From positions 1,208,477 to 1,272,476 of the forward strand of contig OZ287699.1 in NCBI GenBank assembly GCA_965649825.1: a stretch of 64,000 nucleotides of DNA. Direction: 5' to 3'. The position numbers and the translations under genes were made by a program. The notes below the pieces were generated by a model. The model was not told where the DNA came from. It saw nothing but the letters and a program-made list of their open reading frames with translations, and searched no databases. Origin of the DNA: Penicillus capitatus. Taxonomy: Eukaryota > Plantae > Chlorophyta. This document shows positions 1 through 56,400 of this stretch, in pieces. How positions within the stretch are numbered: position 1 is the stretch's first letter; each line of letters opens with the position of its first letter.

Positions 1-87
1 AAAAACACGGATCGGTATCTCTCCCGTCTGACCGATTTCGCAATACCCAAGTGCGTATCTCTCCGACCCTCGTTCACAAGATGATGT

Positions 88-3000
88 ATGCCTTCAGTGT
101 TGAGCACGGGAATAGAGCAAGGCAAAGACAATGGCGCCTCCGTCGGTTTCAAATCGATTGGCGAGTCGGAGGACGATGGCGACGAATGTCCCGTGAAAGG
201 AATGACACAAGACCCTCTCTTCGGCCCAATAACCTCTAAGAAAACTAAAAAGCGTTCGGAGTCGACGACGAGTCGCAATCGGAACCATGCGACGCTTCCC
301 GAATTGGACTTGACGGAGAGTCAGACCCTGCGAGTAAAATACAGGATGCAGAATGGCATGACCAGTGTCGGAACGTTTGCGGCGACGTTTGCGCCTCTAA
401 CTGTTCCTGTCTCAGGAAACACCCCGCCGTTTCAGATTGTCCTGCACCCTATAGACCCGAACCTGCCGACAGTGATACCACAACCGGCGTTGATGGGCCC
501 ATCCATAATGTCCCACGTTCGCCCCCTGATGCCGTCAAGAGAGATGCCTATTTGTGTATCGTTGCCTGCTGCGGTGGTCCATCCACCTGTCGTGCATCAT
601 CCCACGCCGTCGCCTCTCATCACAGGGCCTGCTCCAAATCCGACCGTCTCTGCTGTACCTGCCAGAACGGCAGTGATGCAGGGAGCATCTCAGAAACCGG
701 ACTCCAATAATAAGGTATGGACGGGTATGTGTCTGAAGTGACAGGGTGGAAGCTGGATGGTATCTAGGAGTCCGAGATGCAGCAAGTGAAGGATTTGGTT
801 GATGAGAAGGGATGGCGTGTGACGATTCGTCAGTACCAGTTGGATCTCTACCGAGCCGCCTGCCGCAGGAATGTCATTGCATACTTAGATACAGGATCTG
901 GCAAGACTTTCATTTCTGTTTTACTGATCCGGGAAGTGGCGGCGAAGATGGCCTATAAGGCTTCGACCGAAGGGACACCCCGGAAAAGCATTTTCTTTTT
1001 GGTCCCCAAAAAAGTGCTGGTCCACCAGCAGGCGGGTGTTCTGAAGCAGTTTACGGATCTCCGTGTCTCTGAACACTCGGGGGATCGATTCAATGAGGAC
1101 GTCTGGGATACCTCCACCTGGAGGTGCTACATTTTACGAGCAGATGTCTTGGTCATGACGCCACAGATTCTGCTCAATCTCCTTCGGAGACAGTAAGCGA
1201 TTTCTTCATCACCTTGATGTGACATCTGAACGTGGTTAGAGTGATGGGTATTTCCGAGATTGCGCTCATCGTCTTCGATGAATGCCATCATGCACGAAAA
1301 AACAGTCCATACAACTGTATCATGCAGGTATGTACCGAACAGCATTACTGGTGTTTGGTGTGAGCCGTCTGATCTAGGAATACTATCACAGAGCCAAAGA
1401 TGCGCAGCGGCCTGTACCTAAGATCTTTGGCATGACAGCATCTCTCGTCACGAAGAAACGCAATTCTGACGAGGTCTACAACAGCTTTCTGGAGCTGGAG
1501 AGCAATCTTGACAGTTTGATCATGACAACGAGTCGCGAAGACGTTCAGAAGCATGCGACCTCTGCCATCGAGCGCGATGTGCCGTACAGCATGAACACCA
1601 CGCAAGAGCAGCTTCCTCAGACGTTTCATCTATTGGAGAAGGCAGTGGTGCGGCTGACCATTGCGAATCGACTGAGTATACAACATCATCGAGGACGTGC
1701 TGGTGGATCCTCCTCATGGCAACTCGATTCCAAGAAAGTCAAGGGCCCATTGGAGCAGCTTATTCGACAGATAGGCAATGTCCATCATGTCATCACCGTT
1801 ATGGGTCCATTACCTGGCATCTACGCCTTGTCTGAAGTTGCGGACACCTGGCGCGAGAAAGAGAACAAGAAACTGACCACGTGGAATTTTCCATCGGACA
1901 AGAAAGTGACCGATTTCAGTCTCCATGATGATCGTTTCGAGAAACATCGCGATCTCATCGACGAGAGCTTTGGGAATATGTCAGAGATGCTCTATCATTC
2001 TATGCTGGACATGGGAGTGGCTGTATTGATTGGACTGTTCCAGATTCGAGAGGAAGAGGCACGGATGGAATTGCAGAACGAAATGCAGAGTGCCACAACA
2101 AGTGATCGACCAAAGTCTGTACGTTCCGTTCAGTTAGCTTTGCGTCGTTTGCGAAGCAAACTGGATCTCCAGCCTCTCGAGAAGCTCATTCAGGATCCAT
2201 CTCCATCAGAGGAATGCTTGAACAGCCCTGCAGATTCTGCCAGCTCTGTTTTTCTCTCTCATCGAATGCAGCAGTTATTGAAGGTTTTGATGGTGGAGAA
2301 GTCGCGAATTCCTCCGGAAGAACGCTCAAAGTGGCGTGGAATGATCTTTGTACAACAGACACTGATGGCCATCATTCTGGAACATGTTCTCAGCATCAAC
2401 CCTCAGCTCTCATTCTTCAAATGCCAGAGCTTGACAGGACACAACGGTGCCATTCTGGCGGCGTCTATGGAAGACCATCATCAGCGCAAGATTGTCGAAA
2501 TGTTCCGCACGGGTCGGGTGAATCTCTTGATCTGTACCAGTGTGGCTGAAGAAGGACTAGACATCACACACTGTTCTATGGTCATTCGTTTCGATCTTCC
2601 CGTCACCGAGGCGTCCTACATCCAGAGCAGAGGACGTGCCAGAAAACCGGGTTCATCTTATGTCATGTTCATCAATGCCGATGATACGACCGAGAAGACG
2701 ATGATTGTCAATCTCCGTTTCGCAGAGCAGTGCATGAAGCAGTTTGCTATGTATCGACAGAATCGTGATGACATGGATGATGATGAAGACGTTCTTGGGG
2801 GAACCTATGAGGCCTACTTGGAAATCGCCGAAGCTGAAACGCAAGCGATCTTGCCAAAGGTTGACGAATCGAATGAGGTTGCCCAGAGAACAGCTCCTGA
2901 GATGATTGCTAAGTATGTGCAGCAGCTGCCACAGGACGAGTACTGTCAACTGCAACCGCATCTCATTTTCCGCTCGCGTGACCAGCAGGGACGGACAGAG

Positions 3001-6000
3001 TTTCAGTATCAGCTCACGCTTCCCGTCAACGCAGCTGTCAACAAAGCTATTCTGGGAGAATGGTGCGGCTCGAAACAGAAGGCCAAACAGAGCGCATGCT
3101 ACGCCGCCTGTTGTGAACTGAGAAAGCTGGGAGAGCTCAACACTTCCTTCTTCCCGATTTCTCACAGAGAACGTGCCGAGCCCAGGAGAAGAACCTTCAA
3201 ATCCTTTGGTTCCCAACTCAAAGTCGAGACAGCGATCAATCCAGATAACCTTTCAGTGCAACATGCTGAGTGGAAAAGTGTGGCTGAACGATCAGCGGAG
3301 GCGCCGCCTACGAACGGTCTCGTCCTGCATCTCCAAGTCGTCCGATCGACGCCTGAAATGGAAACACCTTCATCGTCATCTCATCCAGGTTTTGCTTCTC
3401 TTGATTTCTCGCCCCCTCCCTGCATGATCTGTTCTGTTCCAGAATCGCTGCTCTTTGGAATTCTCTCTCTGAAGAAACTGGACAACCTTATGCGTTTTCC
3501 TCTCTACCCTGAAACGGGCAACATTATGGTGGATTTTTTGGATGCTGGATCGAAAGTTGTGTCCAAAAAACAGTTGCAGACGCTCAAGCACTATCACTTT
3601 GCTGTCGAGGAGTCTCTCTATTTCAAAGCTAAACTCTTTACAGCCGTCTGTCGTCAGAAGAGTGACATTATCGAAGCTCTCGTCGATGAAGATGTCGATC
3701 TTCTTCCAGAATACCTGAAGTCAAGTCAAGAGGATCAGCCAGTCCTGAACAAAAGCTGGTATCTGGTCTGTCCTGTCAAACTTTCGACAGGCGACACTTC
3801 CAATGAAGAACCGGATCCGCTGTACCAAAATTCGTCGATGGACAACGATGTCGATGAGGTAATGGACACCACCGAAAGTGAAGAATGCTCAGACTACAGG
3901 ATCGATTGGGAAATGGTGGAGCAAGTCAGCCAACGCATCAAGCATCTCGACAAACCTGGACTGACGAAGTAGGATCAATCTGTGGCTCTCGTGGATGGCT
4001 GAGGGGCATCGTGGATGCGATGATGTGACAGGGTACATCCAGATTTGGCATCACTGAAGAAAGGAGAGATCTTGCTGTCGCCGTATAACAGCAATGCGTA
4101 CAAACTCATGGGCATACGAGATGATCTGAACCTCGAATCGAAGTTTCCGTCGCGGCCCAAGGCCGAGTTCTATGATCCGAGTGTGACCAAAGTACACATC
4201 TGCTGTCACATCAGAGAAATGTGTGAGAATGGTGGGCTTGTAGGAATACAAAGGAAGTTTTGTGCCCAACCGGTCCAATCGACAGTTCTCTACCTTCCTG
4301 GAGTACTACACAGAGCATTGGAAATTCAGTGACCTCGATCTCGAGCAACCTCTCTTGGAATGTGTGACCTTCAAACAGATTCCTGTGGTGAAGAGAGCGA
4401 AGAACCTGTTGAATCCATTGTGGAAACAGGCAAGAGATATGGACGTCTCAGAGGAGCACTTGGATGACTGGAACATTGCCATTCACATGTTACCCCAACT
4501 CGTTGTCATCTATCCCCTGAGCTATACCTTCTGGCAATCCTTGAGCTACATCGTGGCCGTCTGCTGGAAACTCGAATCGATGCTGAAGGTGGGGGAGCTT
4601 CAAGAGAACCTCTTTCCTCCGACGGAGCCTATCCATCCATCCATTGGCTCACCTGATGTGGCACTCATCTACGAGAGCGTCAGCAGTAAGAGCTGTCATG
4701 AACACTGTACCTATGAGAGGCTGGAATTCCTGGGCGATGCGGCACTGAAGTACATCTCATCGTTGTACTGCTATTTCAAGTTTCCGTTGGGACATGAAGG
4801 TATCTTGACCACACAACGCAGTTCCATCATCTCCAATTACCAGTTGGCCAATGTCGCGGTGACGATGGGACTGCAGAAGTATGTACGGAGCATCCAGATT
4901 GGGGAACATCCATGGAAGCCGGCAGGATGCGAGTTTCTGGACGCATGCTGGGCACAGCTTGGCAAATCTGGCATCGGGCATTCGTGGTTTGGCGGCCGGA
5001 CACAGAAGGCCAGCAACGAAAACGCAGCACATCAATGCGAAACGTGTGTCCTGCCGGTCAAACAGGTGGCTGACATCGTGGAAGCACTCCTCGGTGCATG
5101 CTTTGTACACAGTGGCATTCCCTGTGTCTGCGCTATCATGCGTCGAATGGGCCTTCTGGATCCATCAGCAGACTTCATGCTGACCATCCAGACCAACCAG
5201 GATGCCTGGCTCAGAGATGTGGGAGATGCTATGTCTCCTGGACTGGATGGCCTGTCCGACTTCGAAGAGACAAGAAAGCGGCGTTTTGAACATGGGCGCG
5301 AGATCATTGGACTTGAAGATGTGATTGGCCACGACTTCGAAGCGCCGTCCTTTGCCCTTGAGGCTTTGACACACTGTTCATGGCCACACCAGGATCCTCC
5401 ATGCTATCAAAGACTTGAGTACCTAGGCGATGCTGTGCTCGATTTCATGATCGCTGTGCACTACTTCAATACGTATCGGGACATCGATCCTGGACAACTC
5501 ACATCTCTGCGCTCTGCCTCAGTGAACAACGATCGGTTGGCATGCACAGCTGTCAAGACAGATCTGTTCACACACCTGCTGCATTTCTCATCCTATCTCC
5601 AATCGCACATTACCGACTACGTGATGAACTATGCAGAGGGAGAGAGATCCGGCGCGCCAAAGGTTCTTGGAGACATCGTCGAATCGATGATCGGTAGGAT
5701 CCAACTTTCCGCTGTTCTGCTGACACAACAGATCATGATGCAGGTGCCGTCTATCTGGATCTGTATGGTGATTTTTGGGCCACGTGGAAAGTGTGGGATC
5801 CCCTTCTGCAACCGCATTACACACCGGAAACTGTTCCGATACATCCGGTCGTGGAATTGACGAACCGTTGTCATGCCAAAGGACTCGAACTGAAGTTTGC
5901 ATCGATCAAGGACGTTGCCTCGTCCTCGCAGGGACCTGAGAATGGTGAAGCAAACGAAATGGACATTTCGAACTCAGACGATTCGGATGGAGACGAAGAT

Positions 6001-9472: not shown

Positions 9473-12337
9473 TCAGTCCATCGTCAGATCAAGCAATGTA
9501 CAGACATGTTGTAAGACGGCCTGCACAGTGGATCTGTCGCTGACGAGGTGACTCTGTGTAATACCCAGCGCGAAATCCTCCTCAGGGATGGCAAGACCAA
9601 AGGACCCACCCAATCCTGGATGACCCAGTCCATAGACCAATTCTCCATTGCCTTTTCTTTTGAAGACGAAAACGCGGAATCCCAGACTGTAGGCACGTTC
9701 GGCAAAGGTGGCATAGCCTTTGTACGCGTCTTCGTGTTTTGAGGATTGTTCGTGCAGTTCTCCGTAAAGGGGCTGGACATCCATCAACGGAGAAGGTGCT
9801 CTTGGAGACAAGGCACTGTAGAATCGTGCCAATGCCCTTGCAGACATGTGCCCATTGGCACTCGGAATACATGCCTCCCGCACTTGACGCATGTTGAAAG
9901 TGGTGGGATTGAAGAGATATTCAGATCCCTTAAATTTCTCCCATCTTGGCCCACTGGACGTCGGTGGTGCGTTCTGTGCGCCAAAAGCAGTGAGAACGCC
10001 GTCAGGTGAGGACGCCAGAGACTCCATGTGCAAAACGGCCAATCGATCGTCAGATATGTTGGATGGCAGACCGATGTGCAGTTCATCTCCCAGATCCAAT
10101 GGCTCAATGATCCACTCCGTCAGCAATGTGTCGATGCTCTTGCCTGTCATGCCTTGGAGGATTCCTCCGACGAGGTATCCAAAAGTGAGGTAGTGGTATT
10201 CTTCTTTTTCTCCGGGAGCATGTGCCGGTGGAGATTTTTGGAGAAAGGAGAGCATCTGTGTCCAGTCCAGAATCTCATCGAGGGTGGCAATGTCTGGCAA
10301 TGCCCCTGCTAACCCAGCTCGATGATTCAGCACATGACGCAACGTGCATTGTTCCTTGCCATTCTGCTCGAATCCGGGCCAGTATTTGGACACAGGGTCG
10401 TCATAACTGGCACCCGTTCTTTGAATCGCCATGTGCAAAAGGGCTGCCGCGATGCCTTTGGTGACAGAGAAGACATTGAACAGCGTATCTGGTTTGACAG
10501 GACGGGGATCTGCGGTGCCCAGTGTCCCAGCTGTCACATCAGCAAGAAAGGCTCCCTTATGTATGACAGCCACCTGCATGCCCAGAAGCTTCTCTCTTTC
10601 CTTCACTTCCTGCACCACTTTGCAGATGTGCTGCTGAAAAGACGCATTCCGTGCCAACGTATCAGGGTAGATCAATCCCGAAGCATGGTGCCTCTGATCG
10701 ATCGCCTGTTTCAGCGTATCCAGTGCCACAGTCGCCGTGGTTTTGAGATAGGGATAACGCACTTCCATGGTCGAACAGAGTCCTTTCAGCAATCCAATGA
10801 CTCGCGTGAAGAAGACCAGTTCTCCAGGCCAGGCATCTACGGGGCGTTTGGGTCTTGGACGACTTTGCTGTTTGGCTCTGTACTCTTTCAAGCGCCTTTC
10901 CTTCTCGGCCTTGGCTTCTGAAGCAGGGACTGTTTCGAATGCACGGCGGAGATTGACGATGTCCTGAAATGGATCCTGCTCTCGTACCTTCAGCCCCATC
11001 TCTTCAAAGGAACGCAGCAGTCCGTCCATATCCATCGTGTAACAGGAATGCACTAAACGTGCGAAGGCCAGTTTGATCTTCTCATCAAATCTGCGTGCGA
11101 GGCCAAAATCCAAGAGAACTGGAACAGACGTGTCGCCGCCATTCTGAGCGACATTCGTCGAGATCAAGATATTCCCTAAAGGCATGGCGATGGATCGACA
11201 AGCAGATCTCTCAGGAAGAGCGTGATGCATTTTCTGACCTGGGTGTGGATCGGCATTGAAATGTCCATCGATGTGCATCTGAACGGCCCATGCAGCGCAG
11301 ATTCGATCGAGGAGGGCCAATCGATCGACTCTGTGCTTCTCATAGGACTCCACTTCCCGAACACTGAATCCTTGACAATACTCCATCACCAAAACGTCTG
11401 GCTTGACAAGTTCATCGTTCGGAATCTTAGGCACGATGACTTTGATCCCAGCTCGTTCCATGTTGGCACGAATCTCTTTCAAATTTCGCGCCTCGTTTCT
11501 CAGATCTAGCTCTTCCTACAGTTCCAGAACATAAACATCCCCTTCTGGCAGGTTGTACCATACCTTGACGGCTGGAATCCATTCCTGCACGATTTTGCGG
11601 AAGTCATAATCTTCGTTGATCCTGAAGAGAGTCCATCGGTCAAGAAAAGTGTGTTTTCGCGAGTTCTTACCATGCTATCCAGTTGCACAGCGTTTCGAGA
11701 TTGGAGAGATCGTTCTGCATGAGCTTCTCCACGTTCTTATGCCGTGCCTTGATGACCACTTCCTCTCCGCTCTTCAATCTTGCTCGATGCACTTGAGCGA
11801 CGGAGGCGCTGCTTATTGGCACTTCGTCGATGTCTGAAAAGAAAACGGAACGAAAGGCACTGCCTAGAGACTGCTTGAGCATCTCGTCCACTTCATTCCA
11901 CGAACGAGACGGTAATGCATCCTATTAGCAGTCTCACTCTTCCAAGACATATTTCTCACTCTTTTTTCGACTTGGAGTTTTCGAAAGTGTTGGATGTAAG
12001 GGAGAGGCATGATGTCTGGCCGTGAGCTGAGGAATTGTCCCACTTTGATCCAGAGTCCCTTCAAATCGACAATCGACTTCGAAATCGCCTGCCATAACAG
12101 ACCTATATCTTCTCACTCTTTTCGCATTCCACTGATAAGTACCTCGGCGTTGTGTTCATGCGCTTGCTCCCAAAGTACGTCGAGTTCTGGATGAGAAACG
12201 TCTTCATCTTCAAGGGAGAGACCTAAACGCTTCTTTAGCCCACGCTCCTTCCATTGCGTTCGCTTGATCCGCCAGAAAACGCCGAGAGCAGTAGAGTAGA
12301 CGCTGCAGGTGCGCACGGAACTCGAAACGGCGTCCAT
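9473..12337 (-). CDS. ABC1/ADCK atypical kinase fused to a serine beta-lactamase-like domain; spliced (start may be 12430)
   Basis: GLWIKVGQFLSSRPD, GHFNADPHPG, LLDFG, then FSVTK (SxxK), YHYLTFG and GHPGLGG. Confidence 0.88.
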
Positions 12338-12565
12338 CTGTTGAGTATGGCGATCTCCGTGCCGATTGGTCAACGGCGGCGAACTCGGCGTTCTTCCAGT
12401 CTGCGGGGAAACCGCAGCAAGAATTCGCATTCGATCAGCTATGGGTTACGTAATTCCTGCCCTTCATAAGGTAACGATCGAAGACACCATGCACTGGTAG
12501 ACACATAGATATGATAAATCAAAGAATGTGGTTGACAGCCCTTTAACGACGATGTCCGTCCAATA

Positions 12566-14842
12566 TCAAAAAGAAAGAACGCGATCGGACCAATCATTGG
12601 CTAACTTAAAAGACAAACGCGGCAGTTCCGTTAAGGCTTCGGAGACAATCTGTTGTGGATTGATGTCGTCGCCAATGATCTGTAATGGTCACACAATACA
12701 TTACTCTTTTTTCGCGATGTTCTGCGACAGTACCTCCATAAGACTGTTGATTTCTTCCAGATGCAGGCGGTCGTCTTCTGTAAAGGCTTCGATAATTTGA
12801 CGACGAATTCCGCCGTCTAGAATGAGTAAACGCAGGGCGTCTTTGACTGTATCATTCAAATTGAGTGCCATGCCACCCGATCCGTCTTTGGCCAAGGTGA
12901 TCAGATTCTCCAATCGCTTCCACTGGAATTTCCCATCCTGTGCAAAGAAAGAGAGATCGAAGGAGTGTTGGATGCCGTGCAGAGAGCTGACTTGAAACAG
13001 AACCTGAACGAGACGTTCCCTCAGAGCCGGATCTTCATCCGTGAGCAATCTCCTGGCGACATAAGGATAAGCCACTTCCAGGAAATGGAAACTGGGATCC
13101 AGCGTTAAACAAATGCCCTCTTGTGTCAGCAAGGATCTGAGAAACAGAACTTCTCACTCTTATCACACTCTTTGGCATATGTCTCACCGAATGACCAGAC
13201 TGTATCGCTCAGGAATACGAATGGGATACTGATAGACGAGTTCATTGAATCGACTTGTGACTGTTCTAAAATTGAACACTGCCATGCTCTGCCCCAAAGA
13301 ATCTTTCCAAATCTTCTCCAGCGCTGGAATAATGGGAGTAGTATCTGTTCCAGCGGCCAAGAATCCTAAACACCCACGTGTTCTGTTTGCATTCACATGG
13401 GCGCAAAACAGACCAAGTTTAATAAAATCTTCTGCCATGTTTGCGTAGTCTTCATTAACTGCATGGACGACAGCATCGACCAGCACTTGCTTGTTGTTCT
13501 GACTCAGCTGAGCCACATTGCCAAAATCGACATAGGCAATCCTCCCGTCCTCCAGTGCAAAGATATTGCCTGGATGTGGATCTCCATGAAAGAGACCGAA
13601 CTCCAACAGCTGTCGAAGACCCGATCGCACTCCACATTTGACAAACTCGGGGACGTGGATGCTATTCCGAATGCGTTCCGGATCGGTGCAACGAATGCCA
13701 TCGATCCATTCCATAACCAGCAGACGTCTGTTGGAGAGATCTGGCCGAACCCAAGGGATCTTGACCAATGGATCCTCTTCAAAGTTCTTGCCAAATTCAA
13801 TAATGTTTCGTGCTTCCTGAAGATAGTCCAGCTCTTCCAGCAACTTCTCACCGAATTCGTCCACGATCAATTGAGCGCTGCATCCCAATCGTTCCTGTGA
13901 GATCTTGTCGAAAAGCAGCGCCAGTACTCGGAAGAGATACAGATCCCTGGGAGCATAGAAAGAGTGTTGGAGGATAGAGATCTTTGGTGATGTGACAGGA
14001 CGTGAAAATGATCGGTTCGATGCCTGGTCTCTGAACTTTGATGGCCACTTCAACTCCGCTTCCCCTCAGCTTCGCTCGATACACCTGACCTGCAGCACCT
14101 CCATTGAACATCTGCTGTGACGAGTTGCCTCCTCTACCCAGAGAAGCAGCAGCGACGGGTCGCTCCGAGATGTAGCTAAAGACTTGTTCCAATGGCTTGT
14201 CCAATTCCTCCTCGATGATCCTCATGGCCTAGACGTTACGAAATCACCTTTATTTGTCAGTCCATGATGTGACAGCACTTCATCATCCGAAAAGGGAGGC
14301 ACGTCGTCTTGCAAAGTACAAAGCTCGTTCATAAAGTCCTCGCGAACAATATCGGGTCGGTTGGCCAACACCTGACCCGCTTTGATAAATGACGGGCCCA
14401 GTCGCGTCAGCAATTCTCTGAGCTGTGCTGCTCGGCCTTTGACACGCGATGTGGTCAAGGCATCATTACTGAGGTACTCATCTGCCTTGAGGCAGACCCA
14501 GAAGTAACCAAACTCGGCAATCATTTTTACGCCTCGGCAGAAGACACGCAGAGCGTCGCCCGGAGATTTGAGCACTTCATTCTGTATGAGCTGCGGTGTA
14601 TAAGGACTGGCAATATTACAAACGCCTCGTTCTAATTCAAACTGCGTCCACGCTCCATCTCCATCATCGAAACTGCCAGACAGACAAGGCGATAAGAACG
14701 ACGCGCACCAGTTCGTCTCGTCTCACTTCCGAGCATGGATCGCCGTTATCCTGCGAGACCAGGAGTTTCGTTGCGGTGCGGTACGAAACCACGAGCGCGC
14801 AGAAGGGACGAAGGATTGATGACAGATCAAGGACGATTTCAT
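12566..14842 (-). CDS. ABC1K1: Plastid ABC1 atypical kinase 1 (ABC1K1/PGR6 type); spliced
   Basis: ELERGVC, LIVDEFGEKLLEELDY, MEWIDGIRCTD, LRQLLEFGLFHGDPHPGN, YPYVARRLLTD. Intron GTGAGA..GGCAG joins transit-peptide exon MKSSLICHQSF (ATG 14842). Last exon ends NDWSDRVLSF-TGA. Confidence 0.9.
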
Positions 14843-15959
14843 TGAGGATCGCTGTTGTCCTGAAAGAGAGTCAAGAACGCTTCTTCCGTTGTGGTGAAGA
14901 GCACGCGCAACTGGTGGTCGCTGTGTCGTACACCTTTTCGTTGCATCCAAGTATAGCGTTTGCGAATGATGTCTCCATGCAACAGAACATCGAGAGATTT
15001 CACAATGTCACTGCGGCTCCTGCTCATGCGGTCGTTCAGAATCCTGGAGAACGCGATTGAATGGATGAAGTGAAGAAAGGACATGCATACCACAGCAGCT
15101 GCGTGAGGTGCTGAGGTGACAGGCAGAGGAGACGTGGGTAACGCATCGCGTCCTCTGCCAAAGCTGCTTTGGACACTTTGAGGAAGGACATGAAGATCTG
15201 CAGCGTCTTTTGGATCTGTGCGGGAGGAGTGATGAGCATCTCTGGGCAATGGAGGATGAGATGATGCACCAGGGCATCGCTCGGAATGAGGAACTGTCGA
15301 AGACATCGGACAACGGGCCACAGATTCTCGTCCGCCTCCACATAGAGTACTCTTGGCCATTTCTGGATCAAGGCTTGGATATGGACAGGTGGAATCTCGA
15401 GATCGAACAAGAGAGCCTCGAGCATCGGAGATGCTCTTACGCAGTACTTTGGCCGCAGCAGCTCTCCGTGTCCTTGTATCAGCGATTTTATTTGTTCATT
15501 GGAGAAGCTGAGTTGAAGCTGGAGAAGCTGTTTGAGGCGTCGGATGTCTTCAGACTTCGCTTCGATGCTACAGGGATGCTCCAGAAGGAGATCTCGAACG
15601 TCGTTCTTGGACATCCCGACTTCGTCCATTAAAGACCGCAACATATCTCGGACGCAGCGAAGGGGCTGCGCAAGGAATGGATGAAATTTCCCGACCACCT
15701 TTTTCGCGTCGCTTAACGTGATGCCATACTCTGACAGCACTGCCAGGCGCCGCTCGATATGTGGCCGATCGCGTTCGCGATAGAGTCGCAGTCCTTTGCG
15801 GCGCAAGTTCTCGTCGAAGAACTGCAGATATTCTTTATGCGTGAAACCTCCACCTTCGGAGATCCATCGACGCAGAAGGGGAGGGTGTTTGATCCAGTGA
15901 CGACCCAAGAGGCGGAAGTGGTGCATGATGCGACGGGCCATCACGATGTCTGGACGCAT
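14839..15959 (-). CDS. mTERF-family organellar nucleic-acid-binding protein; one intron (start 15959, 15941 or 15926)
   Basis: Repeated helical units ending in xPxxL (KFHPFL, EHPCSI, KWPRVL, HCPEML, RYPRLL). A 47-nt intron joins the last exon, ending TEEAFLTLFQDNSDPQ-TGA. Confidence 0.75.
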
Positions 15960-16819
15960 GGCCTGTTCGACACGCTTTTCGGCGTTTCTCAAGACGAAGC
16001 CGCGTTTGATATTGGGATCGTATTCAGCATCGCGGCGTTGTGTTATGGAGGAGATGGGACGTGAATACGGTTTTGCGTTCGAGGTATCCCGGATCTCACT
16101 CTTTCACACTTTTTCAGGGAGAACGGTTGATCAGATGGCGGCAGCGGGGATTGATGAAAAGAGCATACGGCGTGAAGACCCTGAACAGCTTGTCGTGACG
16201 TTGGGTTACGAGAAGGCACGTGCACTCCTGCAGCAAAATGCCGAATCGTGGCGTGGTGCCCAGACCTACCTCATTACAGGAGATCAAGTGTGCGATGCTG
16301 TATGTTTGCGCGAGATGATGCAGTCTGGATCCTTGCAGGTGGTTGTCCATGACGGCCGGATATTGGAAAAGCCTGAAAGCGCCGAAGAGATTCGCCAAAA
16401 CGTCTGCAAATTTGCAGAACGGCCAGCAAAGACAGGTAAGACAAGAGTGAGATGATCTAAAACGTTCGCAAAAGTGTGACTGTGCGCAGTGGGCTCTATT
16501 GTCTGCACACATATACCGTCTGGAGAGCAGCAGCACAAAATTGACATGGCAACGATCTACATGGATCCAATACCAGAGAGCACCGTAGAGCAACTGATCG
16601 CAGAAGGCGCCGTTTTTGCTTCTGCCGGTACAGTCGTATTGTTTGAGTGAGAAAAAGTGTGCGAGCTTAGGTGGATTGTTGGCGGAACATCCACTGGTGT
16701 CTCCCTACGTGACACAGATCGATGGTGGATTGGATGCTGTTATGGGCCTGTCAAAAATGACAGTCATGACACTCTTGGTACAGATGTGGCAAAGCACCGA
16801 TTCTTTTGCTTCTCCCTAA
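15958..16819 (+). CDS. Maf-like nucleoside triphosphate pyrophosphatase; spliced (start between 15925 and 15958)
   Basis: RLILGSYSASRR, GIDEKSIR, LITGDQVVVHDGRILEKP, GGLLAEHPLV, DAVMGLSK. Confidence 0.85.
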
Positions 16820-34517: not shown

Positions 34518-34637
34518 GAGCTTCCATCATTCAACCGTGAATGCACCCGATCCCTTCAGAACTCGGAAGTTAAGCGCGGTTTGGGGTCAGTAGTACTGCC
34601 ATGAGTGATCTGGCGGGAAATCGACCTGTGGAAGCTT
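34518..34637 (+). rRNA. 5S rRNA: 5S rRNA gene, single copy in window
   Basis: About 120 nt; terminal stem GAGCTTCCA/TGGAAGCTT; conserved GATCCC.TCAGAACTC, box A AGTTAAGC, box C region AGTAGTACT..ATG.GTGA; helices kept by compensatory changes; followed by a T run. Confidence 0.93.
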
Positions 34638-50448: not shown

Positions 50449-53400
50449 TTATTCTTTGATAATGATGTTCTTCAGCAGTCGTGGAAATTCGTGTTCAAAC
50501 TCTTCTCTTAGGTATCCGACAAACACACTGATTGCTGCCTTATCCCATTTTCCAATCTCGCGTGAAGAAGTTGTGTGCGACACCAAGGAGACTTTTTCAG
50601 ATTCTGTAGGGGGATCTAGTGTGAATGAGTTCCACACGAAAAAAATTGAAAACCCGCCCTTATTAGAAGGTGGAAATGATATTGCCGTAGAAATGACTTC
50701 TTCGAGTTTTACGCATTCCAATGCCTTTCTCGCAGAATCGCACACTTCCGAATCTTCGTCGATGCACCTCCTAGCCAGCGTCGGCAGAAGCTCGCCGGCG
50801 CGGTGCGGAGCCGCCATGATGACGCGACCGACGGCCTTTATCGCCGCCCGACGCACAAAATCATTTTTGTCGCCGCATCCCCGTACCAGCGTCGGCAGAT
50901 ACTCGCCGGCGTACTGCGGAGCCGCTACGACGATGTGGCCTATGGCCTCCACCGCAGTCTGACGCACACGCCAGTCTCCGTCGTTGCCTTTCCTAGTAAG
51001 TGCCGACAGTAACTTGCCGGCGTGTTGTGGAACCTCTTCGACTACGCGACCGATGGAGCCTATCGCCGCCTGACGCACACGATAATCATTGTCGCCGCAC
51101 CCCCTGGCCAGCGTCGCCAGATGCTCGGCGGCGTGTTGCGGAGCCGCCACAACGACGCGACCGATGGAGCCTATCGCCGCGTGACGCACAGAATAATCTT
51201 TGTCGCCGCACCCCCTGGCCAGCGTCCACAGATGCTCGGCGGCGTGTTGCGGAGCCGCAACAACAACGCGACCGATCGAGTTCATCGCCGCCTGACGCAC
51301 GCTAGAGTATTCGTCGCCGCATCCCCATACCAGCGTCGGCAGATACTCGGCGGCGTGTCGCGGTGAAGCCGCAACGACGCGGCCGATAGCTTCCATCGCC
51401 GGCGCACGCACAACAGAATTACTGTCGCTGCAATTATTCGCCAACCTCGGCAGAAACTCTCCGGCATGCTGAGGCATTGACGCCGCGACGACCCGGTCGA
51501 AGGCTTCCATCGCCACCTGACGCACATGCCAGTCGATGTCGTCGCACCCCCTTGCCAGCGTCAGCAGATGCTCGCCGGCGTGCTGCGGTGCCGCCACGAT
51601 GACGCGGGCGATGGCCTTTATCGCCGCCTGACGCACATGAGGGTGTTTGTCACGGTATCCCATCGCAAGCGTGGGCAGATGCTCGCCAGCATTCTGCGGC
51701 GTCGCCGCCGCAACGACGCCTTCGATGGCCTTTATCTTTGCCTCGCCTATGTTTTCGTCTTCATCGGCGCGCCCTCTGGCAAGTATCGGTGGACGCTCGC
51801 CGCCGTACTGTGGCACCGCGGCGATGACGCGGTTGATGGCTTCTATCGCCGCCTCACGGACGTTGCAGTCTTCGTCGTCGCGCCCCCTCGCCAGCGTCGG
51901 GAGATAGTCGCCGGCGTGCTGCGGAGCCGCCACGACGACGCGGCCGATGGCCTTTATCGCCGCCTGACGCACATAATGGTTTTCGTCGTAGCATCCTATC
52001 GCCAGCCTCAGCAGATAGTGGCCGGCGTGTTGTGGAGCCTCTTTGACGACGCGGCCGATGGCCTCCATCGCAGCCTTACGGACGAGGAAGATTTTGTCGC
52101 CGCATCCTGTCGCCAGCGTCAGCAGATAGTCGTCGGCAATCTGCGGCAACGCCGCGACAACGCGGCCGATGGCCTTCACCGCAACCGCACGGACGTCCAG
52201 ATCTTCGTCGCCGCACCTCTTCGCCAGCGTCGGCAGAAGGTTGCCAAAATTCTTCGTCGCAGCGTCGATGATGTCTTCAATGGCCTCCAACGCAGCGTCA
52301 CGTACGTCGTAATTGTAGTCGGCGCTCCCTCTCGCCAGCGTCGAGAAATAGTCGTCGGCGTATTGCGGAGCCTCCCTGACGACTCGGCCGATGGCCTTCA
52401 ATGCCTTCATGCGTACGTCGTCGTTATTGTCGCCGCATCCTTTCTCCAGTGTCGGCAGATACTTGCCGGCAAGCTGCGGCACCGCCGCGAGGACGCGGCC
52501 TATGGCCTCTACCGCAGCCATACGCACGTCCCAGTCTGTGTCGCCGTACCCCTTCACCAGTATCGCCAGCTGCTTATTGGCTTCCTGTGGCACCGCCGCG
52601 ACAACGCAGCAGATGGCCTCCATGGCTGCCATACGCACACATCCAATTTGGTCATCGCACACCCTTGTTAGCGTCGTCAGAAGTTCGACGGCGTCGTCCT
52701 GTGGCACCGCCTCGACGACGCGGTCGATTGCTTCTATCGCCGCTCGACGCACACTGGAGTATTCGTCGCGGCATCCTAACGCCAGCTTTGGCAAATGCTT
52801 GCCTGCGTGCTGCGGCGTTGTTACGGCGAGCCGGCCAATGCTTTCTACCGCTGCAAGACGCACATGCCATTCTTTGTCGATGTACCCCATGGCCAATGTC
52901 TGTAAAAGCTCGCCACCGTGCCGTTGTGCTGCATCGAATACGAGATTGATAGCTTCCGTCGCCACTTGACGCACGCAGTCGTCGAATTTGTCGTAGTCGT
53001 CGTCGTCGTCGTCGCTTTCTCTCGCCAGTGTCGGCAGATGCCTGTCGGCGTTCCGTGGCGCCTCCCCGACGACACTGTCGAAGACTTCCATTGCTGCCCG
53101 ACACACGCCAAAGTCTTCGTCGCCACATCCTTTCGCCAGCGTCGGCAGATAGTCGCTGGCGTGCTGCGGCGCCGCCCCGACGACGCGATAGATGGCTCTT
53201 GTCGCCGTCCAACGGACGTTTTCGTCTTCGTCACCGCACATTCTTACCAGTGTCGGCAAAAGCTTGGTGGCAAACTGTGGCGCTTGTGTTACGATAGACT
53301 CGAACATGTCAATGCATTCGTCTCTACTGGATGCTTCATGAACGTCATTTGCTATTTGTAAGATAAGCTGCGGCAATGCATCACTGTGCTCTGGAGAGTG

Positions 53401-56400
53401 GGCTGTGAGTTTCAAGACGTCATGAATTTTGACCATTTCTTCCGAATATAAATATCCCGAGCATGCGATCGTGTTCTTCAGTCTATCAACGGTGCCAGCA
53501 AGAAGTCGAGGGAATTGTTCTAGAACGCGAGACAATTGTTTGATCTCTTCGAACACGATTTCACGAATCGTATCATGGTCGATTGTGCTCTCAAGTAGTT
53601 GACGGGCGCTATCGACGAGCGCAATTGCTTGTTTGTCTTCCGTTAAAACATCCAACTCATCGTTATCTGCCTCTTCTAACGTCGCCTCGAGAACTCGCAT
53701 TCTCAAAAAAAGGTGACGCACTCCGAGAACTTCGACGGGTTGTGTGTCAACGATTGAAAGCAGCTCTTTCAACGCTTGTTTGTTTCGACTCTCCGCAAAT
53801 GCGTGCATGGCGAAGGTTAGCATGAGGTCATGCTTCTTATCATACTTCCCCTTGTGGATGAAATCGAGCACTCTTGTCTCCTCATCCGATCCTTTTTGCT
53901 TCAACATTCTCGCTATGTATCTTCCGGCAAAATACTCTTGAAAGGTCAGGTGAGGGAATTGATACTGCTTGCCCTCCAACACGAGCAAAAGGAGTCCGCT
54001 CTCTTTGAAAGTTTGAGCCGCATTCTTCGATGTTGCGTGTAGCATAACAAATCTCTCGTCCATGTAAATGTCTCCATTCCGAAGCGATTTGAAGGCTATC
54101 TTTTCCAGATCTCTAAAGAGTTCCACTTTCTTTATGTTTTTTCCCGCTGGCTTTTCTTCGAACCTTTTCCAGACGTAATTCGCCATTTCGTTGTATATTT
54201 GAAACGTGGTCGTTCCCTTTCCTCCTTTTTCAAAACTATCACCGTGTTCCTTCGACAAAGAACAAAGAATGTGTGCCGTCACCGGAATGTGCGCCATCTC
54301 CCACATGGCGGTATTTTTATAAAGAGATCGGATGAACTTCGGTGCCTCTTTCTCGGACAGTTCGCTTTTTACATAGTCTCGCAGTTGCTCATCGTTGAAT
54401 CCGAGGCACTCTACTTGGATGTCGACACGTGTTTCTAAGTCTCTCATGTTGTAAGGTCGAGACAGCAATAGAACTTTGCACGAACGCTTCCATACGGTGG
54501 ACACCAGTTCTCTCGTGTGGTCATTTGCTTCGTCCAGTCCGTCAAGCACGAGCAGAGTTGAAGGATCGTTGAGGTCATCCTCCACTTGTAAGAGGAGATC
54601 TTCGTATTTGAAGGTATTCGGGCTTCCGCAGAAGCATATTTTCGATATCGCTCCTTCGAGCCTTGACAATTTCTGCTCCGCGGGCTCGGTAGTGTTGAGA
54701 ACTCTCACCGGCACCACGTAAACGGCTTTGAACTCTTGTGCCATTTCCCCCAACGCCCATTTGTGTGCGATAACTTTTGTGATGCACGTCTTACCGGCGC
54801 CGGGGTTTCCGTAGAGAAGAACACGTCGAACTTCTATTTCCGGATCTCCGGGCTTGAGAGATCTTCGCTTGAACAGATCGTCCAGAGCAATGGGTTTCGT
54901 GACCCTCATCTTCTTCTCGTAGTATTCTTTTGCTTGGTCCACTCTATGGTCTGAGGACTTTCCTTCCATTGCTTCCCCTCCCCGATTGCCTTTTATATTC
55001 CCTTCCTTTGATTTATTCGTTTGCTCTTGGATAATCTCCTCGGAAATGACGATATGATGCTCCATGTCCTTGACATGCTTGGGTAATCCGTCTCCGAACA
55101 AAGACGTCACCTACAAGTCAAGGCACTTTATCGACGTGGATGTGCTTTCCGTGCCAGTACCGTCGCGAAATGGTTTCGCAAGTATCTGTTCCTCAGCTCT
55201 TCTCTTTTCGAATCCACGATGGCAAGAGGAATGTACCCCGCGTCTCTGCCGGTCTTGATGCACAAATCCTTACGTTTTTCGGTAGTGCTTTGCAGGCTCC
55301 GTTCTCTAAGCCTGTCTTCTATGCTGTTCCCTCCCAGCCACTCTGCTAATGCTTCTTCGCTAGAACCCTTGCAAGACTGGTGTAGGACGAGCAAGGCGTT
55401 CTTGGTGTCTTCGTCTTCGTTGCATTGGCCAATTCTGTGGATCTCAGATAAAACATCTAACAGTGCGATCAAGATATCACTATCGTCAGTCCATCCTTCG
55501 TTTACAGTCTGCTGCGTTGCCAGATTGACCAGCTTCTTTGTGGCATCGTCTCGGACGTTTTCCGACAGACCTTCAAGTGCGAGTGTGCCCAACTCGCAAA
55601 CGATGCCATATCTCAACGCTTTCAACTCTTCTTCATTACTCATATTTCTTTGGCGCTCCATTGCAGCACTGTAGACGCTTTCAAAAAGCTCAAGGTTCGC
55701 TTCGTCCTTTGCCGCCTTTTGTCTTGCTATTATCAGATTCTTAAATGTGTCAAACCACGGTTTTTTAGACACTCCCATATTGGCAACGGCGGCTCGAGCT
55801 TTTGCGTATGCATCCTGAAGATCCTCGGGATCGACGTCACCTCTTGCCAGATTTCTGACACAGTGAAGAACATACAGGAATACGCACAATCCACAGCCGA
55901 TATGTTGCATTGCAGATTCAAGATGCGAAGAAGCATCTTCTGTTCTGAAGCGTTCCACTGCTTGTCGAAGAGTCTTGAAATGGAAGCGCACCGGGTAGTG
56001 CTCGCATGAGAGCTCCATTGCTCTTTCTTTCTCCGCAACGGCACGACGGAGTTCATGCTTCTCTTCTTTGCAGACGCCAGTCTGACTGGTTTCTGAAAGC
56101 AGCAAAAAAGTCTGACGTAGAGCGAGAAATGTCACTTCATATTTTGCAAAGTTCTCTTTTGTAAGCCTCGGTTCCGCAGAAAGGCTGCCTAAAAGCTTTC
56201 TGGCTATCACGACGAGCTCTGCAACACCCCCGTATGAGGAAGGATCAGCCAGGTTAAGTGCTCCGTAGAGGGCAGTTGCGTAGTTCGGTCGCCGGAAGTT
56301 TTCTTGACAAATACAGGAATAGAGGGCTTGTATTAAGTCGCTCAGAATGTTCTTGTCATGTGTAAAGCGGGGTATGATGTTGGCCAATTCTGCATACTCA

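What the first reader, a model, noticed from the sequence alone, without database searches (positions are those of the whole stretch)
14839..14842. Bacterial-style ATGA stop/start overlap between mTERF and ABC1K1 in a eukaryote
Seen: on the minus strand the mTERF stop TGA (14841-14839) overlaps the only plausible ABC1K1 start ATG (14842-14840). That ATG opens a transit-peptide-like exon (MKSSLICHQSFVPSARSW..) that splices in frame to the conserved ELERGVC; the next in-frame Met is inside the conserved region. Known: ATGA overlaps drive translational coupling in operons, and bicistronic mRNAs are reported in green algae, but normally with spacers. Inference: either termination-reinitiation on a bicistronic mRNA, or an ABC1K1 promoter buried in the mTERF last exon.
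Basis: partly seen in the sequence, partly recalled or inferred. Interest (0 to 1): 0.8.

Follow-up and report, generated by a model that had tools for sequence, protein, structure and literature searches.

The report
Overlapping mTERF–ABC1K1 gene pair, green alga
In an uncultured green alga the stop codon of an mTERF gene really does overlap the start codon of the chloroplast kinase gene ABC1K1. The two genes stay pressed together in three relatives, and RNA-derived contigs run across the junction, so this looks like a new example of the two-genes-on-one-mRNA loci already known in green algae.

Summary
On the minus strand, ATGA at 14842..14839 is both the mTERF stop (TGA 14841..14839) and the ABC1K1 start (ATG 14842..14840).

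**Gene models hold.**
- The 47-nt mTERF intron and last exon complete the Pfam mTERF domain.
- Codon-substitution patterns against a syntenic relative switch frame exactly at the ATG.
- The ATG is the conserved first in-frame start of a transit-peptide-like exon.

**The exact ATGA is not conserved, but the abutment is.** Stop-to-start spacing is a 4-nt overlap (window), a 16-nt overlap (L001), a 4-nt overlap (L004) and a 5-nt spacer (L003). This holds although synonymous sites are saturated between lineages.

**Transcript evidence.** L003 and L004 lack all introns, so they are mRNA-derived. Both carry the mTERF 3' coding sequence directly upstream of a complete ABC1K1. L003 crosses the spliced mTERF exon junction.

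**Relation to known cases.** Bicistronic loci, including overlapping stop/start codons, are already described in green algae. This locus is atypical because ORF1 is long (1,074 nt) and ATG-rich (21 ATGs), which argues against the usual leaky scanning.

**What stays open.** Reinitiation on a dicistronic mRNA and a nested ABC1K1 start site remain unresolved. No TURBS-like motif or RNA structure was found. I rate it a new member of a known kind, of moderate interest.

The parts
14839..14842 (-). ATGA junction: ABC1K1 start ATG (14842..14840) overlapping the mTERF stop TGA (14841..14839)
   Evidence: Read directly. The ATG is conserved in L001, L003, L004 and the L007 copy. The mTERF stop position differs between them.
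15091..15959 (-). mTERF exon 1 (ATG at 15959..15957)
   Evidence: 307-aa ORF call P0001 with Pfam mTERF. Whole-gene pN/pS against L001 is 0.107/0.249.
15044..15090 (-). mTERF intron, 47 nt, GT..AG
   Evidence: 69% identity with indels against L001. Absent from the mRNA-derived contig L003.
14839..15043 (-). mTERF last exon including the stop codon
   Evidence: pN/pS 0.38 only in the mTERF frame. It completes the Pfam mTERF profile to position 313 of 314. It aligns colinearly to the L003 upstream ORF (BLASTP E 1e-10).
14727..14842 (-). ABC1K1 exon 1, a transit-peptide-like N-terminus (MKSSLICHQSFVPSARSW...)
   Evidence: pN/pS 0.33 only in the ATG frame. First 40 residues: S+T 9, R+K 7, D+E 0. 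Homologous N-termini start at the same Met in L001, L003, L004 and L008.
14673..14726 (-). ABC1K1 intron 1, 54 nt, GT..AG
   Evidence: 72% identity with a 5-nt indel against L001. Absent in L003 and L004.
12566..14672 (-). ABC1K1 exons 2-9 (14672-14279, 14228-14138, 14089-14002, 13946-13414, 13365-13188, 13136-12992, 12937-12734, 12679-12566), with seven further 48-55-nt introns. Stop TGA at 12568..12566. The product is 620 aa.
   Evidence: Spliced model built against P0003. Pfam ABC1 and orthology to ABC1K1.
15958..16455 (+). Divergent Maf-like gene, first exon. Its candidate start codons (15925, 15928, 15946, 15958) lie at or inside the mTERF 5' coding end, so mTERF fills the whole space between the Maf and ABC1K1 start codons.
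   Evidence: Pfam Maf E 9e-9 with the domain starting at ORF residue 27. The region is conserved in L001.

Best explanation
mTERF and ABC1K1 are two real, separately translated nuclear genes of an uncultured chlorophyte, probably a siphonous ulvophyte of the Bryopsidales/Ostreobium kind. They form one conserved head-to-tail unit.

Shown:
- The two coding sequences abut or overlap (spacing from a 16-nt overlap to a 5-nt spacer) in four taxa.
- Spliced transcripts in relatives run from the mTERF coding sequence straight into and through ABC1K1.

Inferred:
- With no room for a 3' UTR or poly(A) site between them, the mTERF mRNA is a dicistronic mRNA that ends at the ABC1K1 3' end.
- This would make the locus one of the polycistronic loci known from green algae.
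- ORF1 is 1,074 nt long, carries 21 ATGs and has a -3 purine at its own start. Leaky scanning, the usual green-algal mechanism, is therefore unlikely.
- ABC1K1 would then be translated mainly by ribosomes that terminate on mTERF and re-engage the AUG lying within a few nucleotides of the stop (termination-reinitiation). This is the natural counterpart of the synthetic long-ORF1, 6-10-nt-spacer bicistronic vectors that work in Chlamydomonas.
- Shorter nested transcripts may add to this.
For: 1. The junction and both exon models are verified.
2. L003 (2,162 nt) and L004 (1,978 nt) encode ABC1K1 at 79% and 84% identity. They lack all 8 ABC1K1 introns, and L003 also lacks the mTERF intron, so they derive from spliced RNA.
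3. L003 carries an 81-codon ORF colinear with the mTERF C-terminus across the exon junction (E 1e-10). It ends in TGA 5 nt before the ABC1K1 ATG. L004 has ...GACAGATGAACG, which is ATGA again.
4. In both contigs an in-frame stop lies 6-17 codons upstream of the ATG with no intervening ATG.
5. The abutment is old. Window versus L003 ABC1K1 gives pS 0.82 (saturated) and pN 0.12. The distance from the conserved mTERF ..TL motif to the ATG changed only from 23 to 32 nt. By contrast, the next intergenic spacer gained 4 indels between the much closer window and L001.
6. The mTERF CDS has 21 ATGs (observed/expected 1.5) and start context GCCATGC. Leaky-scanning bicistrons have ORF1 medians of 291-357 nt and ATG observed/expected of about 0.45 (PMC11291117).
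7. Precedent exists. Auxenochlorella has loci with inter-ORF 0. Chlamydomonas has long-ORF1 bicistrons. Vectors with 6-10-nt spacers express ORF2 in Chlamydomonas.
8. The ABC1K1 AUG context is weak (-3 pyrimidine) in 3 of 4 taxa. Context matters less for reinitiation.
Against: - No full-length read shows both complete ORFs on one molecule. Short-read assemblers merge overlapping same-strand transcripts.
- Both contigs stop inside mTERF (252 and 75 nt upstream of the ATG), which also fits an internal start site.
- Reinitiation after long ORFs is rare in eukaryotes and normally needs a tethering element (PMC5972666). I found no UGGGA motif within 150 nt upstream. There is no stable local structure (fold z-scores +0.2, +1.0, +1.4 and -0.7). 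There is no excess synonymous constraint in the last 40 mTERF codons (pS 0.217 against 0.252, P 0.55).
- In the Dueñas data, long-ORF1 loci mostly show low ORF2 ribosome occupancy. That sits poorly with a conserved chloroplast kinase.
- That the JGI samples are metatranscriptomes is inferred from the absence of introns, not documented.
Confidence: 0.42

Rival explanations
1. Nested promoter with overlapping monocistronic mRNAs. ABC1K1 is translated from its own capped mRNA, whose start site lies inside the mTERF gene. The mTERF mRNA merely reads into or through ABC1K1. The CDS overlap would then be a by-product of local compaction, with no translational coupling.
For: - Both mRNA-derived contigs begin inside mTERF, at -252 and -75.
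- The last 103-123 nt before the ABC1K1 AUG are free of ATG in the window, L001 and L003, as are all 75 nt in L004. That would give a clean 5' UTR.
- Start sites inside neighbouring coding sequence appear unavoidable at this locus. The Maf and mTERF start codons share a CATG head to head. The next ABC1K gene starts 135 nt after the ABC1K1 stop, while the relatives' contigs end about 50 nt after that stop.
- In L008, ABC1K1 sits 88 nt behind a different upstream gene.
- No reinitiation element was detected.
Against: - L003 extends across the spliced mTERF exon junction, so at least some transcripts start upstream of the last exon.
- Such transcripts carry 3 upstream ATGs in L003.
- An mTERF poly(A) site would have to lie inside ABC1K1.
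- The ATG-free stretch is weak evidence, with chance probability of roughly 0.2-0.25 per lineage.
- The relatives' genome type is not compact overall: Ostreobium quekettii has 146 Mb and 10,663 genes.
Confidence: 0.35
2. Dicistronic mRNA with ABC1K1 reached by leaky scanning past the mTERF AUG, as shown for other green-algal bicistrons.
For: This is the experimentally supported mechanism in Auxenochlorella and Chlamydomonas (PMC11291117). The mTERF 5' UTR must be very short because Maf starts head to head, and short leaders favour leakiness.
Against: A scanning 40S subunit would have to pass 21 ATGs (12 in frame, 9 out of frame; observed/expected 1.5) over 1,071 nt. The ORF1 start also has a -3 G. 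The defining signatures of a short ORF1 and ATG depletion are absent.
Confidence: 0.1
3. Shared promoter with alternative splicing. An isoform would remove most of the mTERF CDS and join a 5' leader to an acceptor just upstream of the ABC1K1 ATG, making ABC1K1 the first ORF.
For: An acceptor-like sequence, CTCTCTTTCAG|G, lies 20 nt upstream of the ATG. It is identical in the window, L001 and L007.
Against: That sequence also encodes conserved mTERF residues (TLFQ). It is not conserved in L003 or L004. Neither contig shows such a junction.
Confidence: 0.05
4. A gene-model or assembly artefact. For example, mTERF is a pseudogene, the ATG is not the real start, or a frameshift or readthrough produces a fusion protein.
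For: The public gene calls on these contigs are prokaryote-style ORFs. ABC1K1 is always in the -1 frame relative to mTERF in all four taxa.
Against: - Purifying selection acts on both genes, and the frame switches at the ATG.
- The Pfam domain is completed by the last exon.
- The same arrangement appears in two independent long-read assemblies and two RNA contigs.
- There is no slippery heptamer, and in-frame stops lie upstream of the ATG in L003 and L004.
- A fusion would bury the transit peptide.
Confidence: 0.03

Closest known systems
Green-algal nuclear bicistronic loci with overlapping ORF1 stop and ORF2 start (Auxenochlorella protothecoides; Dueñas et al. 2024, PMC11291117; Gallaher et al. 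2021, PMC7896298)
   Same: Two independent ORFs on one strand with zero or negative spacing. The pairing is conserved among related algae. ORF2 is the longer, conserved protein.
   Different: - Those ORF1s are 189-399 nt with 0-6 ATGs and weak Kozak contexts. Here ORF1 is 1,074 nt with 21 ATGs and a -3 purine.
- Full-length Iso-Seq support exists there and not here.
- mTERF and ABC1 do not appear in that paper's text or supplements. The Gallaher supplements were not available.
Long-ORF1 bicistronic loci of Chlamydomonas reinhardtii (7 of 35 high-confidence loci have ORF1 over 900 nt; Dataset S01), and the synthetic bicistronic vectors with a long ORF1 and a 6-10-nt spacer (Onishi and Pringle, as discussed in PMC11291117)
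   Same: A long, ATG-containing ORF1 precedes a translated ORF2 in a green alga. The synthetic design has the same near-zero spacing.
   Different: The natural Chlamydomonas long-ORF1 loci have 149-1,263-nt spacers and mostly low ORF2 ribosome occupancy. The vectors are artificial and their mechanism is disputed.
Viral stop/restart: victorivirus AUGA or UAAUG with an upstream H-type pseudoknot (PMC6631646), and calicivirus/influenza B TURBS (PMC5972666)
   Same: The same tetranucleotide AUGA sits after a long ORF1. Start and stop lie within a few nucleotides. The two products are separate, not fused.
   Different: No UGGGA motif, no stable upstream structure and no conserved nucleotide element were found. 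This is a cellular, spliced nuclear mRNA. The AUGA itself is not conserved among relatives.
Overlapping or read-through transcription units of compact eukaryotic genomes such as prasinophytes, microsporidia and nucleomorphs (from general knowledge, not tested here)
   Same: Start sites and 3' ends lie inside neighbouring genes, and multigene transcripts occur without necessarily coupled translation.
   Different: The likely relatives do not have a compact genome overall (146 Mb and 10,663 genes in Ostreobium quekettii). The crowding here is local.

Membership tests
Green-algal polycistronic (bicistronic) locus | Two or more independent ORFs, each with its own start and stop, on the same strand and closely spaced (0 to a few hundred nt) | tested here: met
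   A 4-nt overlap in the window. A 16-nt overlap, a 4-nt overlap and a 5-nt spacer in the relatives.
Green-algal polycistronic (bicistronic) locus | Both complete ORFs on one mature transcript, exclusively (full-length reads) | tested here: inconclusive
   The intron-less contigs L003 and L004 span the junction plus all of ABC1K1, but only 247 and 75 nt of mTERF. They are short-read assemblies from relatives, not the window organism.
Green-algal polycistronic (bicistronic) locus | Colinear ORF pair conserved in related species | tested here: met
   Conserved in the window, L001, L003 and L004 despite pS 0.82. Absent in Bryopsis sp. (L005) and in L008.
Green-algal polycistronic (bicistronic) locus | Leaky-scanning signature: short ORF1, weak ORF1 Kozak context, ATG depletion upstream of ORF2 | tested here: not met
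   ORF1 is 1,074 nt with 21 ATGs (observed/expected 1.5) and context GCCATGC. Reference values: 291-357 nt and about 0.45.
Green-algal polycistronic (bicistronic) locus | Both ORFs translated (ribosome profiling or proteomics) | not testable with these tools
   Proxy evidence only: frame-specific purifying selection on both genes.
Viral-type termination-reinitiation (victorivirus AUGA; TURBS) | ORF1 stop and ORF2 start overlapping or within a few nucleotides | tested here: met
   AUGA in the window and L004. A 5-nt spacer in L003. A 16-nt overlap in L001.
Viral-type termination-reinitiation (victorivirus AUGA; TURBS) | Upstream structured element (an H-type pseudoknot within about 40 nt, or TURBS motifs 2/2*) | tested here: not met
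   Folds of -90..+30 give z-scores of +0.22, +1.00, +1.36 and -0.74. The folding tool cannot predict pseudoknots, but no stable stems are present.
Viral-type termination-reinitiation (victorivirus AUGA; TURBS) | UGGGA motif complementary to 18S rRNA helix 26 upstream of the restart site | tested here: not met
   No TGGGA within 150 nt upstream in any of the four sequences.
Viral-type termination-reinitiation (victorivirus AUGA; TURBS) | ORF2 translation depends on termination of ORF1 translation nearby | not testable with these tools
   Needs reporter or ribosome-profiling experiments.
Bacterial operon with translational coupling | Prokaryotic gene structure (no spliceosomal introns; 70S re-engagement aided by a Shine-Dalgarno sequence) | tested here: not met
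   Both genes contain GT..AG introns of 47-55 nt that are removed in L003 and L004. Their homologues are nuclear genes of green algae and plants.
ABC1K1 (plastid ABC1 atypical kinase 1) | ABC1/UbiB kinase domain, closest to proteins annotated ABC1K1, with an N-terminal transit-peptide-like extension | tested here: met
   Precomputed Pfam PF03109 and PF27536 on the homologues. 62-72% identity to named ABC1K1 proteins. The N-terminus has S+T 9, R+K 7 and D+E 0 in 40 aa. Actual plastid import was not tested.
mTERF family | Match to Pfam PF02536 above the curated cut-off | tested here: met
   51 bits against a cut-off of 23.1, E 1.3e-13, with the profile covered to position 313 of 314 only under the spliced model.

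The most novel reading that the evidence does not exclude
A cellular, spliced nuclear mRNA on which a conserved chloroplast kinase (ABC1K1) is translated mainly by termination-reinitiation after a full-length 357-codon ORF (mTERF). It would do so without any TURBS- or pseudoknot-like tether, and the arrangement would have been maintained across deeply diverged siphonous green algae. That would imply that green-algal ribosomes have an unusually high intrinsic capacity to reinitiate after long ORFs.
Probability: 0.2. Interest if true: 0.7.

Novelty: new member of a known kind. Interest (0 to 1): 0.45.

Why it matters
Polycistronic nuclear genes in green algae are recent knowledge, and their accepted mechanism is leaky scanning past short, ATG-poor first ORFs. 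This locus combines a full-size, ATG-rich first gene with a stop/start overlap, and it has been kept across lineages whose synonymous sites are saturated.

If both proteins come from one mRNA, this would be a natural test case for reinitiation after long ORFs in a eukaryote. It would also be a natural template for the compact bicistronic expression vectors already used empirically in Chlamydomonas.

If ABC1K1 instead has a nested start site, the locus shows how promoters and 3' ends can sit entirely inside neighbouring coding exons in a genome that is probably not compact (inferred from a likely relative, Ostreobium quekettii).

There is also a practical lesson. Prokaryote-style ORF calling on eukaryotic metagenome contigs truncates both genes here.

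Tried and rejected
1. Searching for more junction-spanning contigs. The mTERF profile search found only the window, L001, their last-exon ORFs, a truncated duplicate (L007) and one distant mTERF.
2. Deeper synteny. Bryopsis sp. KO-2023 has an ENTH gene on the opposite strand upstream. L008 has a C2-like gene 88 nt upstream and no mTERF. L009 and L010 are ordinary monocistronic-looking transcripts from GC-rich algae.
3. RNA elements. Rfam found only a 5S rRNA elsewhere in the window. Local folds are not more stable than shuffles. No UGGGA motif is present.
4. A hidden DNA or RNA element at the mTERF 3' end. Synonymous divergence there is not reduced.
5. A frameshift or readthrough fusion. This is rejected because there is no slippery site and in-frame stops lie upstream of the ATG in L003 and L004.
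6. Documenting the JGI samples 3300008030 and 3300008031. No paper mentions them. The Ostreobium genome paper shows only that JGI sequenced coral-holobiont metatranscriptomes containing Ostreobium. The link to these two samples rests on my recollection plus inference.
7. Bacterial promoter and terminator scans were not used, as they are not meaningful for a eukaryote.
Full report
**1. The observation**

On the minus strand, window 14842..14839 reads ATGA. Upstream, a 318-codon ORF (15992..15036) carries Pfam mTERF. With a 47-nt GT..AG intron (15090..15044) it continues in frame through 15043..14839 and ends ...FLTLFQDNSDPQ-TGA. The ATG at 14842 opens MKSSLICHQSFVPSARSWFRTAPQRNSWSRRITAIHAR. Through a 54-nt GT..AG intron (14726..14673) this joins NFDDGDGAWTQFELERGVCNIASPY..., the conserved N-terminal part of ABC1K1.

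**2. Are the exon models right?**

The window is part of a 1.58-Mb contig of an ENA metagenome assembly (L002 is its reverse complement). A syntenic 960-kb contig from a related species, L001, has the same gene order. That order is Vps62, VPS13, Maf on one strand, then mTERF, ABC1K1, ABC1K+beta-lactamase on the other, then a Dicer-like gene. The public gene calls on both contigs are prokaryote-style ORFs. That explains why mTERF is recorded as an unspliced 307-aa product.

- The pairwise alignment shows exons at 84-90% identity without indels. The two introns flanking the junction are 69-72% identical and carry indels.
- A Nei-Gojobori count by frame gives pN/pS 0.38 in the mTERF frame of the last exon (2.34 and 0.82 in the others). 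It gives 0.33 in the ATG frame of ABC1K1 exon 1 (1.07 and 2.76 in the others). The protein-coding frame therefore switches at the ATG.
- Only the spliced mTERF matches Pfam PF02536 to its C-terminal end: residues 193-346 against profile 162-313 of 314, E 1.3e-13. The unspliced product stops at profile position 216.
- Whole-gene mTERF pN/pS is 0.107/0.249, so it is a functional gene.
- The complete ABC1K1 model has nine exons, eight GT..AG introns of 48-55 nt and 620 aa, with its stop at 12568..12566.

**3. Identity and organism**

The ABC1K1 product is 62-72% identical to green-algal and plant proteins, many named ACTIVITY OF BC1 COMPLEX KINASE 1, chloroplastic. The best named hit is Bryopsis sp. 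KO-2023 at 72%.

The first 40 residues are rich in Ser/Thr and Arg/Lys and have no acidic residues, as expected for a transit peptide. GC is about 50%.

The organism is therefore a chlorophyte, probably a siphonous ulvophyte. An Ostreobium-like alga fits: Ostreobium quekettii has GC 52.4%. This assignment is an inference.

**4. Relatives and transcripts**

Two JGI contigs encode the closest ABC1K1 proteins. L003 is 2,162 nt (P0003, 79% identity, full coverage). L004 is 1,978 nt (P0004, 84% identity). Both have one uninterrupted ABC1K1 ORF and lack all eight introns present in the window. They therefore derive from spliced RNA.

- **L003.** Positions 2..247 are an open frame running off the 5' end. 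It aligns colinearly with the last 81 residues of the window mTERF, across the exon-exon junction (BLASTP E 1e-10). It ends in TGA, followed by CGAAA and the ABC1K1 ATG at 253.
- **L004.** The mTERF tail ends ...EKTRDR* within GACAGATGAACG, which is an ATGA overlap again.
- **L001.** The junction is CCTCGATGCAACCGTCCTTGA. The ATG is kept, but the mTERF stop lies 12 nt further on, giving a 16-nt overlap.
- **L007.** This is a truncated duplicate in the L001 sample. It carries the mTERF 3' part, an intron with a destroyed donor, the last exon and about 90 nt of ABC1K1 exon 1, then repeats. Its junction is of the L001 type.
- **Start codon.** In both RNA contigs an in-frame stop lies 6-17 codons upstream of the ATG with no intervening ATG. 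L008 and P0007 also begin MKGS.... This ATG is therefore the ancestral ABC1K1 start.

The abutment is old. ABC1K1 of the window against L003 has pS 0.82 (saturated) and pN 0.12. The mTERF tails are only 32% identical. Even so, the distance from the conserved mTERF ..TL motif to the ATG is 23 nt in the window and L001 and 32 nt in L003 and L004.

The pairing is limited to this clade. Bryopsis has a different upstream neighbour. L008 has a C2-like gene ending 88 nt upstream. More distant algae have ordinary leaders.

**5. Mechanism**

No space exists for an mTERF 3' UTR or poly(A) site before ABC1K1. Any mTERF mRNA must therefore extend into ABC1K1. The simplest case is a dicistronic mRNA ending about 50 nt after the ABC1K1 stop, where both RNA contigs end.

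Such loci are known in green algae (PMC7896298). Dueñas et al. (PMC11291117) explicitly report Auxenochlorella loci with overlapping stop and start codons. Their Dataset S01 lists five loci with inter-ORF 0.

That literature supports leaky scanning, whose signatures are:
- ORF1 medians of 291-357 nt;
- a weak ORF1 Kozak context;
- ATG observed/expected of about 0.45 upstream of ORF2.

Here ORF1 is 1,074 nt with 21 ATGs (observed/expected 1.5) and the context GCCATGC. Leaky scanning is therefore unlikely.

Two candidates remain:
- **Termination-reinitiation at the adjacent AUG.** Precedents are the synthetic long-ORF1 vectors with 6-10-nt spacers in Chlamydomonas and viral AUGA stop/restart.
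- **A nested start site giving a monocistronic ABC1K1 mRNA.**

I looked for elements that would favour reinitiation and found none. There is no UGGGA motif, no stable structure and no extra synonymous constraint at the mTERF 3' end.

Several points favour a nested start site:
- Both contigs start inside mTERF.
- The last 100 nt or so upstream of the AUG are ATG-free.
- The locus is crowded. The Maf and mTERF start codons share a CATG head to head. The next ABC1K gene starts 135 nt after the ABC1K1 stop.

Against a start site confined to the last exon, L003 crosses the spliced junction into exon 1.

Short-read assembly can merge overlapping transcripts, so co-linearity on a single molecule is not proven. 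I put about 0.42 on the dicistronic-plus-reinitiation reading, 0.35 on the nested start site, 0.10 on leaky scanning, and the remainder on alternative splicing or artefact.

**6. Comparison and verdict**

The locus meets the structural and conservation criteria of a green-algal bicistronic locus. It fails the leaky-scanning signature. Single-molecule evidence is inconclusive.

It shares the AUGA and the long ORF1 with victorivirus stop/restart, but lacks that system's defining RNA elements.

It is not bacterial-type coupling. I rate it a new member of a known kind with an atypical ORF1, of moderate interest. The interesting possibility is efficient reinitiation after a 357-codon cellular ORF, and that needs full-length RNA, cap mapping and reporter tests.

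Noticed in passing
window 15925-15960 (both strands): The divergent Maf-like gene (+) and mTERF (-) meet head to head. The mTERF ATG (15959..15957) and a Maf candidate ATG (15958..15960) share the palindrome CATG. The other Maf candidate starts (15925, 15928, 15946) lie inside the mTERF CDS. The mTERF CDS thus fills exactly the space between the start codons of its two neighbours. The region is conserved in L001.
   Followed up: partly
window 9473-12565 (-): A second ABC1 kinase gene, fused to a beta-lactamase domain, follows ABC1K1 on the same strand. It includes a 669-codon intron-free ORF at 9473..11482. Its candidate ATG at 12430 lies only 135 nt after the ABC1K1 stop (about 155 nt in L001, with four indels). 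The ABC1K1 to ABC1K+beta-lactamase order is also kept in L008.
   Followed up: partly
window 12566-14842 and 15044-15090: All nine introns examined are uniformly tiny (47-55 nt). Three of the eight ABC1K1 introns (14137-14090, 13413-13366, 12991-12938) are multiples of three without stop codons. ORF callers therefore read straight through them and add 16-18 spurious residues.
   Followed up: partly
L007:9750-10330 (sample ERZ26696514, contig ctg303732): A truncated duplicate of the mTERF 3' part plus the first 90 nt or so of ABC1K1 exon 1. The intron donor is mutated (GGCACAG). It is followed by tandem 41-codon repeat ORFs and a retroelement gag-protease ORF. This looks like a dead segmental copy that preserves the L001-type junction.
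   Followed up: partly
window 34519-34637 (+): A 5S rRNA gene (Rfam RF00001, 93 bits), apparently solitary. No tRNA genes were found in the 64-kb window.
   Followed up: no
window 14616-14620 (-): TGTAA lies in ABC1K1 exon 2, about 165 nt downstream of the mTERF stop in the spliced RNA. From general knowledge this is the usual chlorophyte poly(A) signal. It is kept in all four taxa through the codon choice TGT-AAY for Cys-Asn. It could be an mTERF poly(A) signal or mere coincidence.
   Followed up: no
window 50449-55110 (-) and 1432-5860 (+): A 1,553-codon intron-free ORF encodes a NACHT NTPase followed by many HEAT repeats, in a locally GC-richer stretch (55%). At the other end of the window is a Dicer-like gene with helicase C, Dicer dimerisation and two RNase III domains.
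   Followed up: no
L008:7337-7885: In a more distant relative, ABC1K1 again sits very close (88 nt) behind a same-strand gene, but a different one (C2-domain-like). Tight upstream packing of ABC1K1 may therefore predate the arrival of mTERF.
   Followed up: partly
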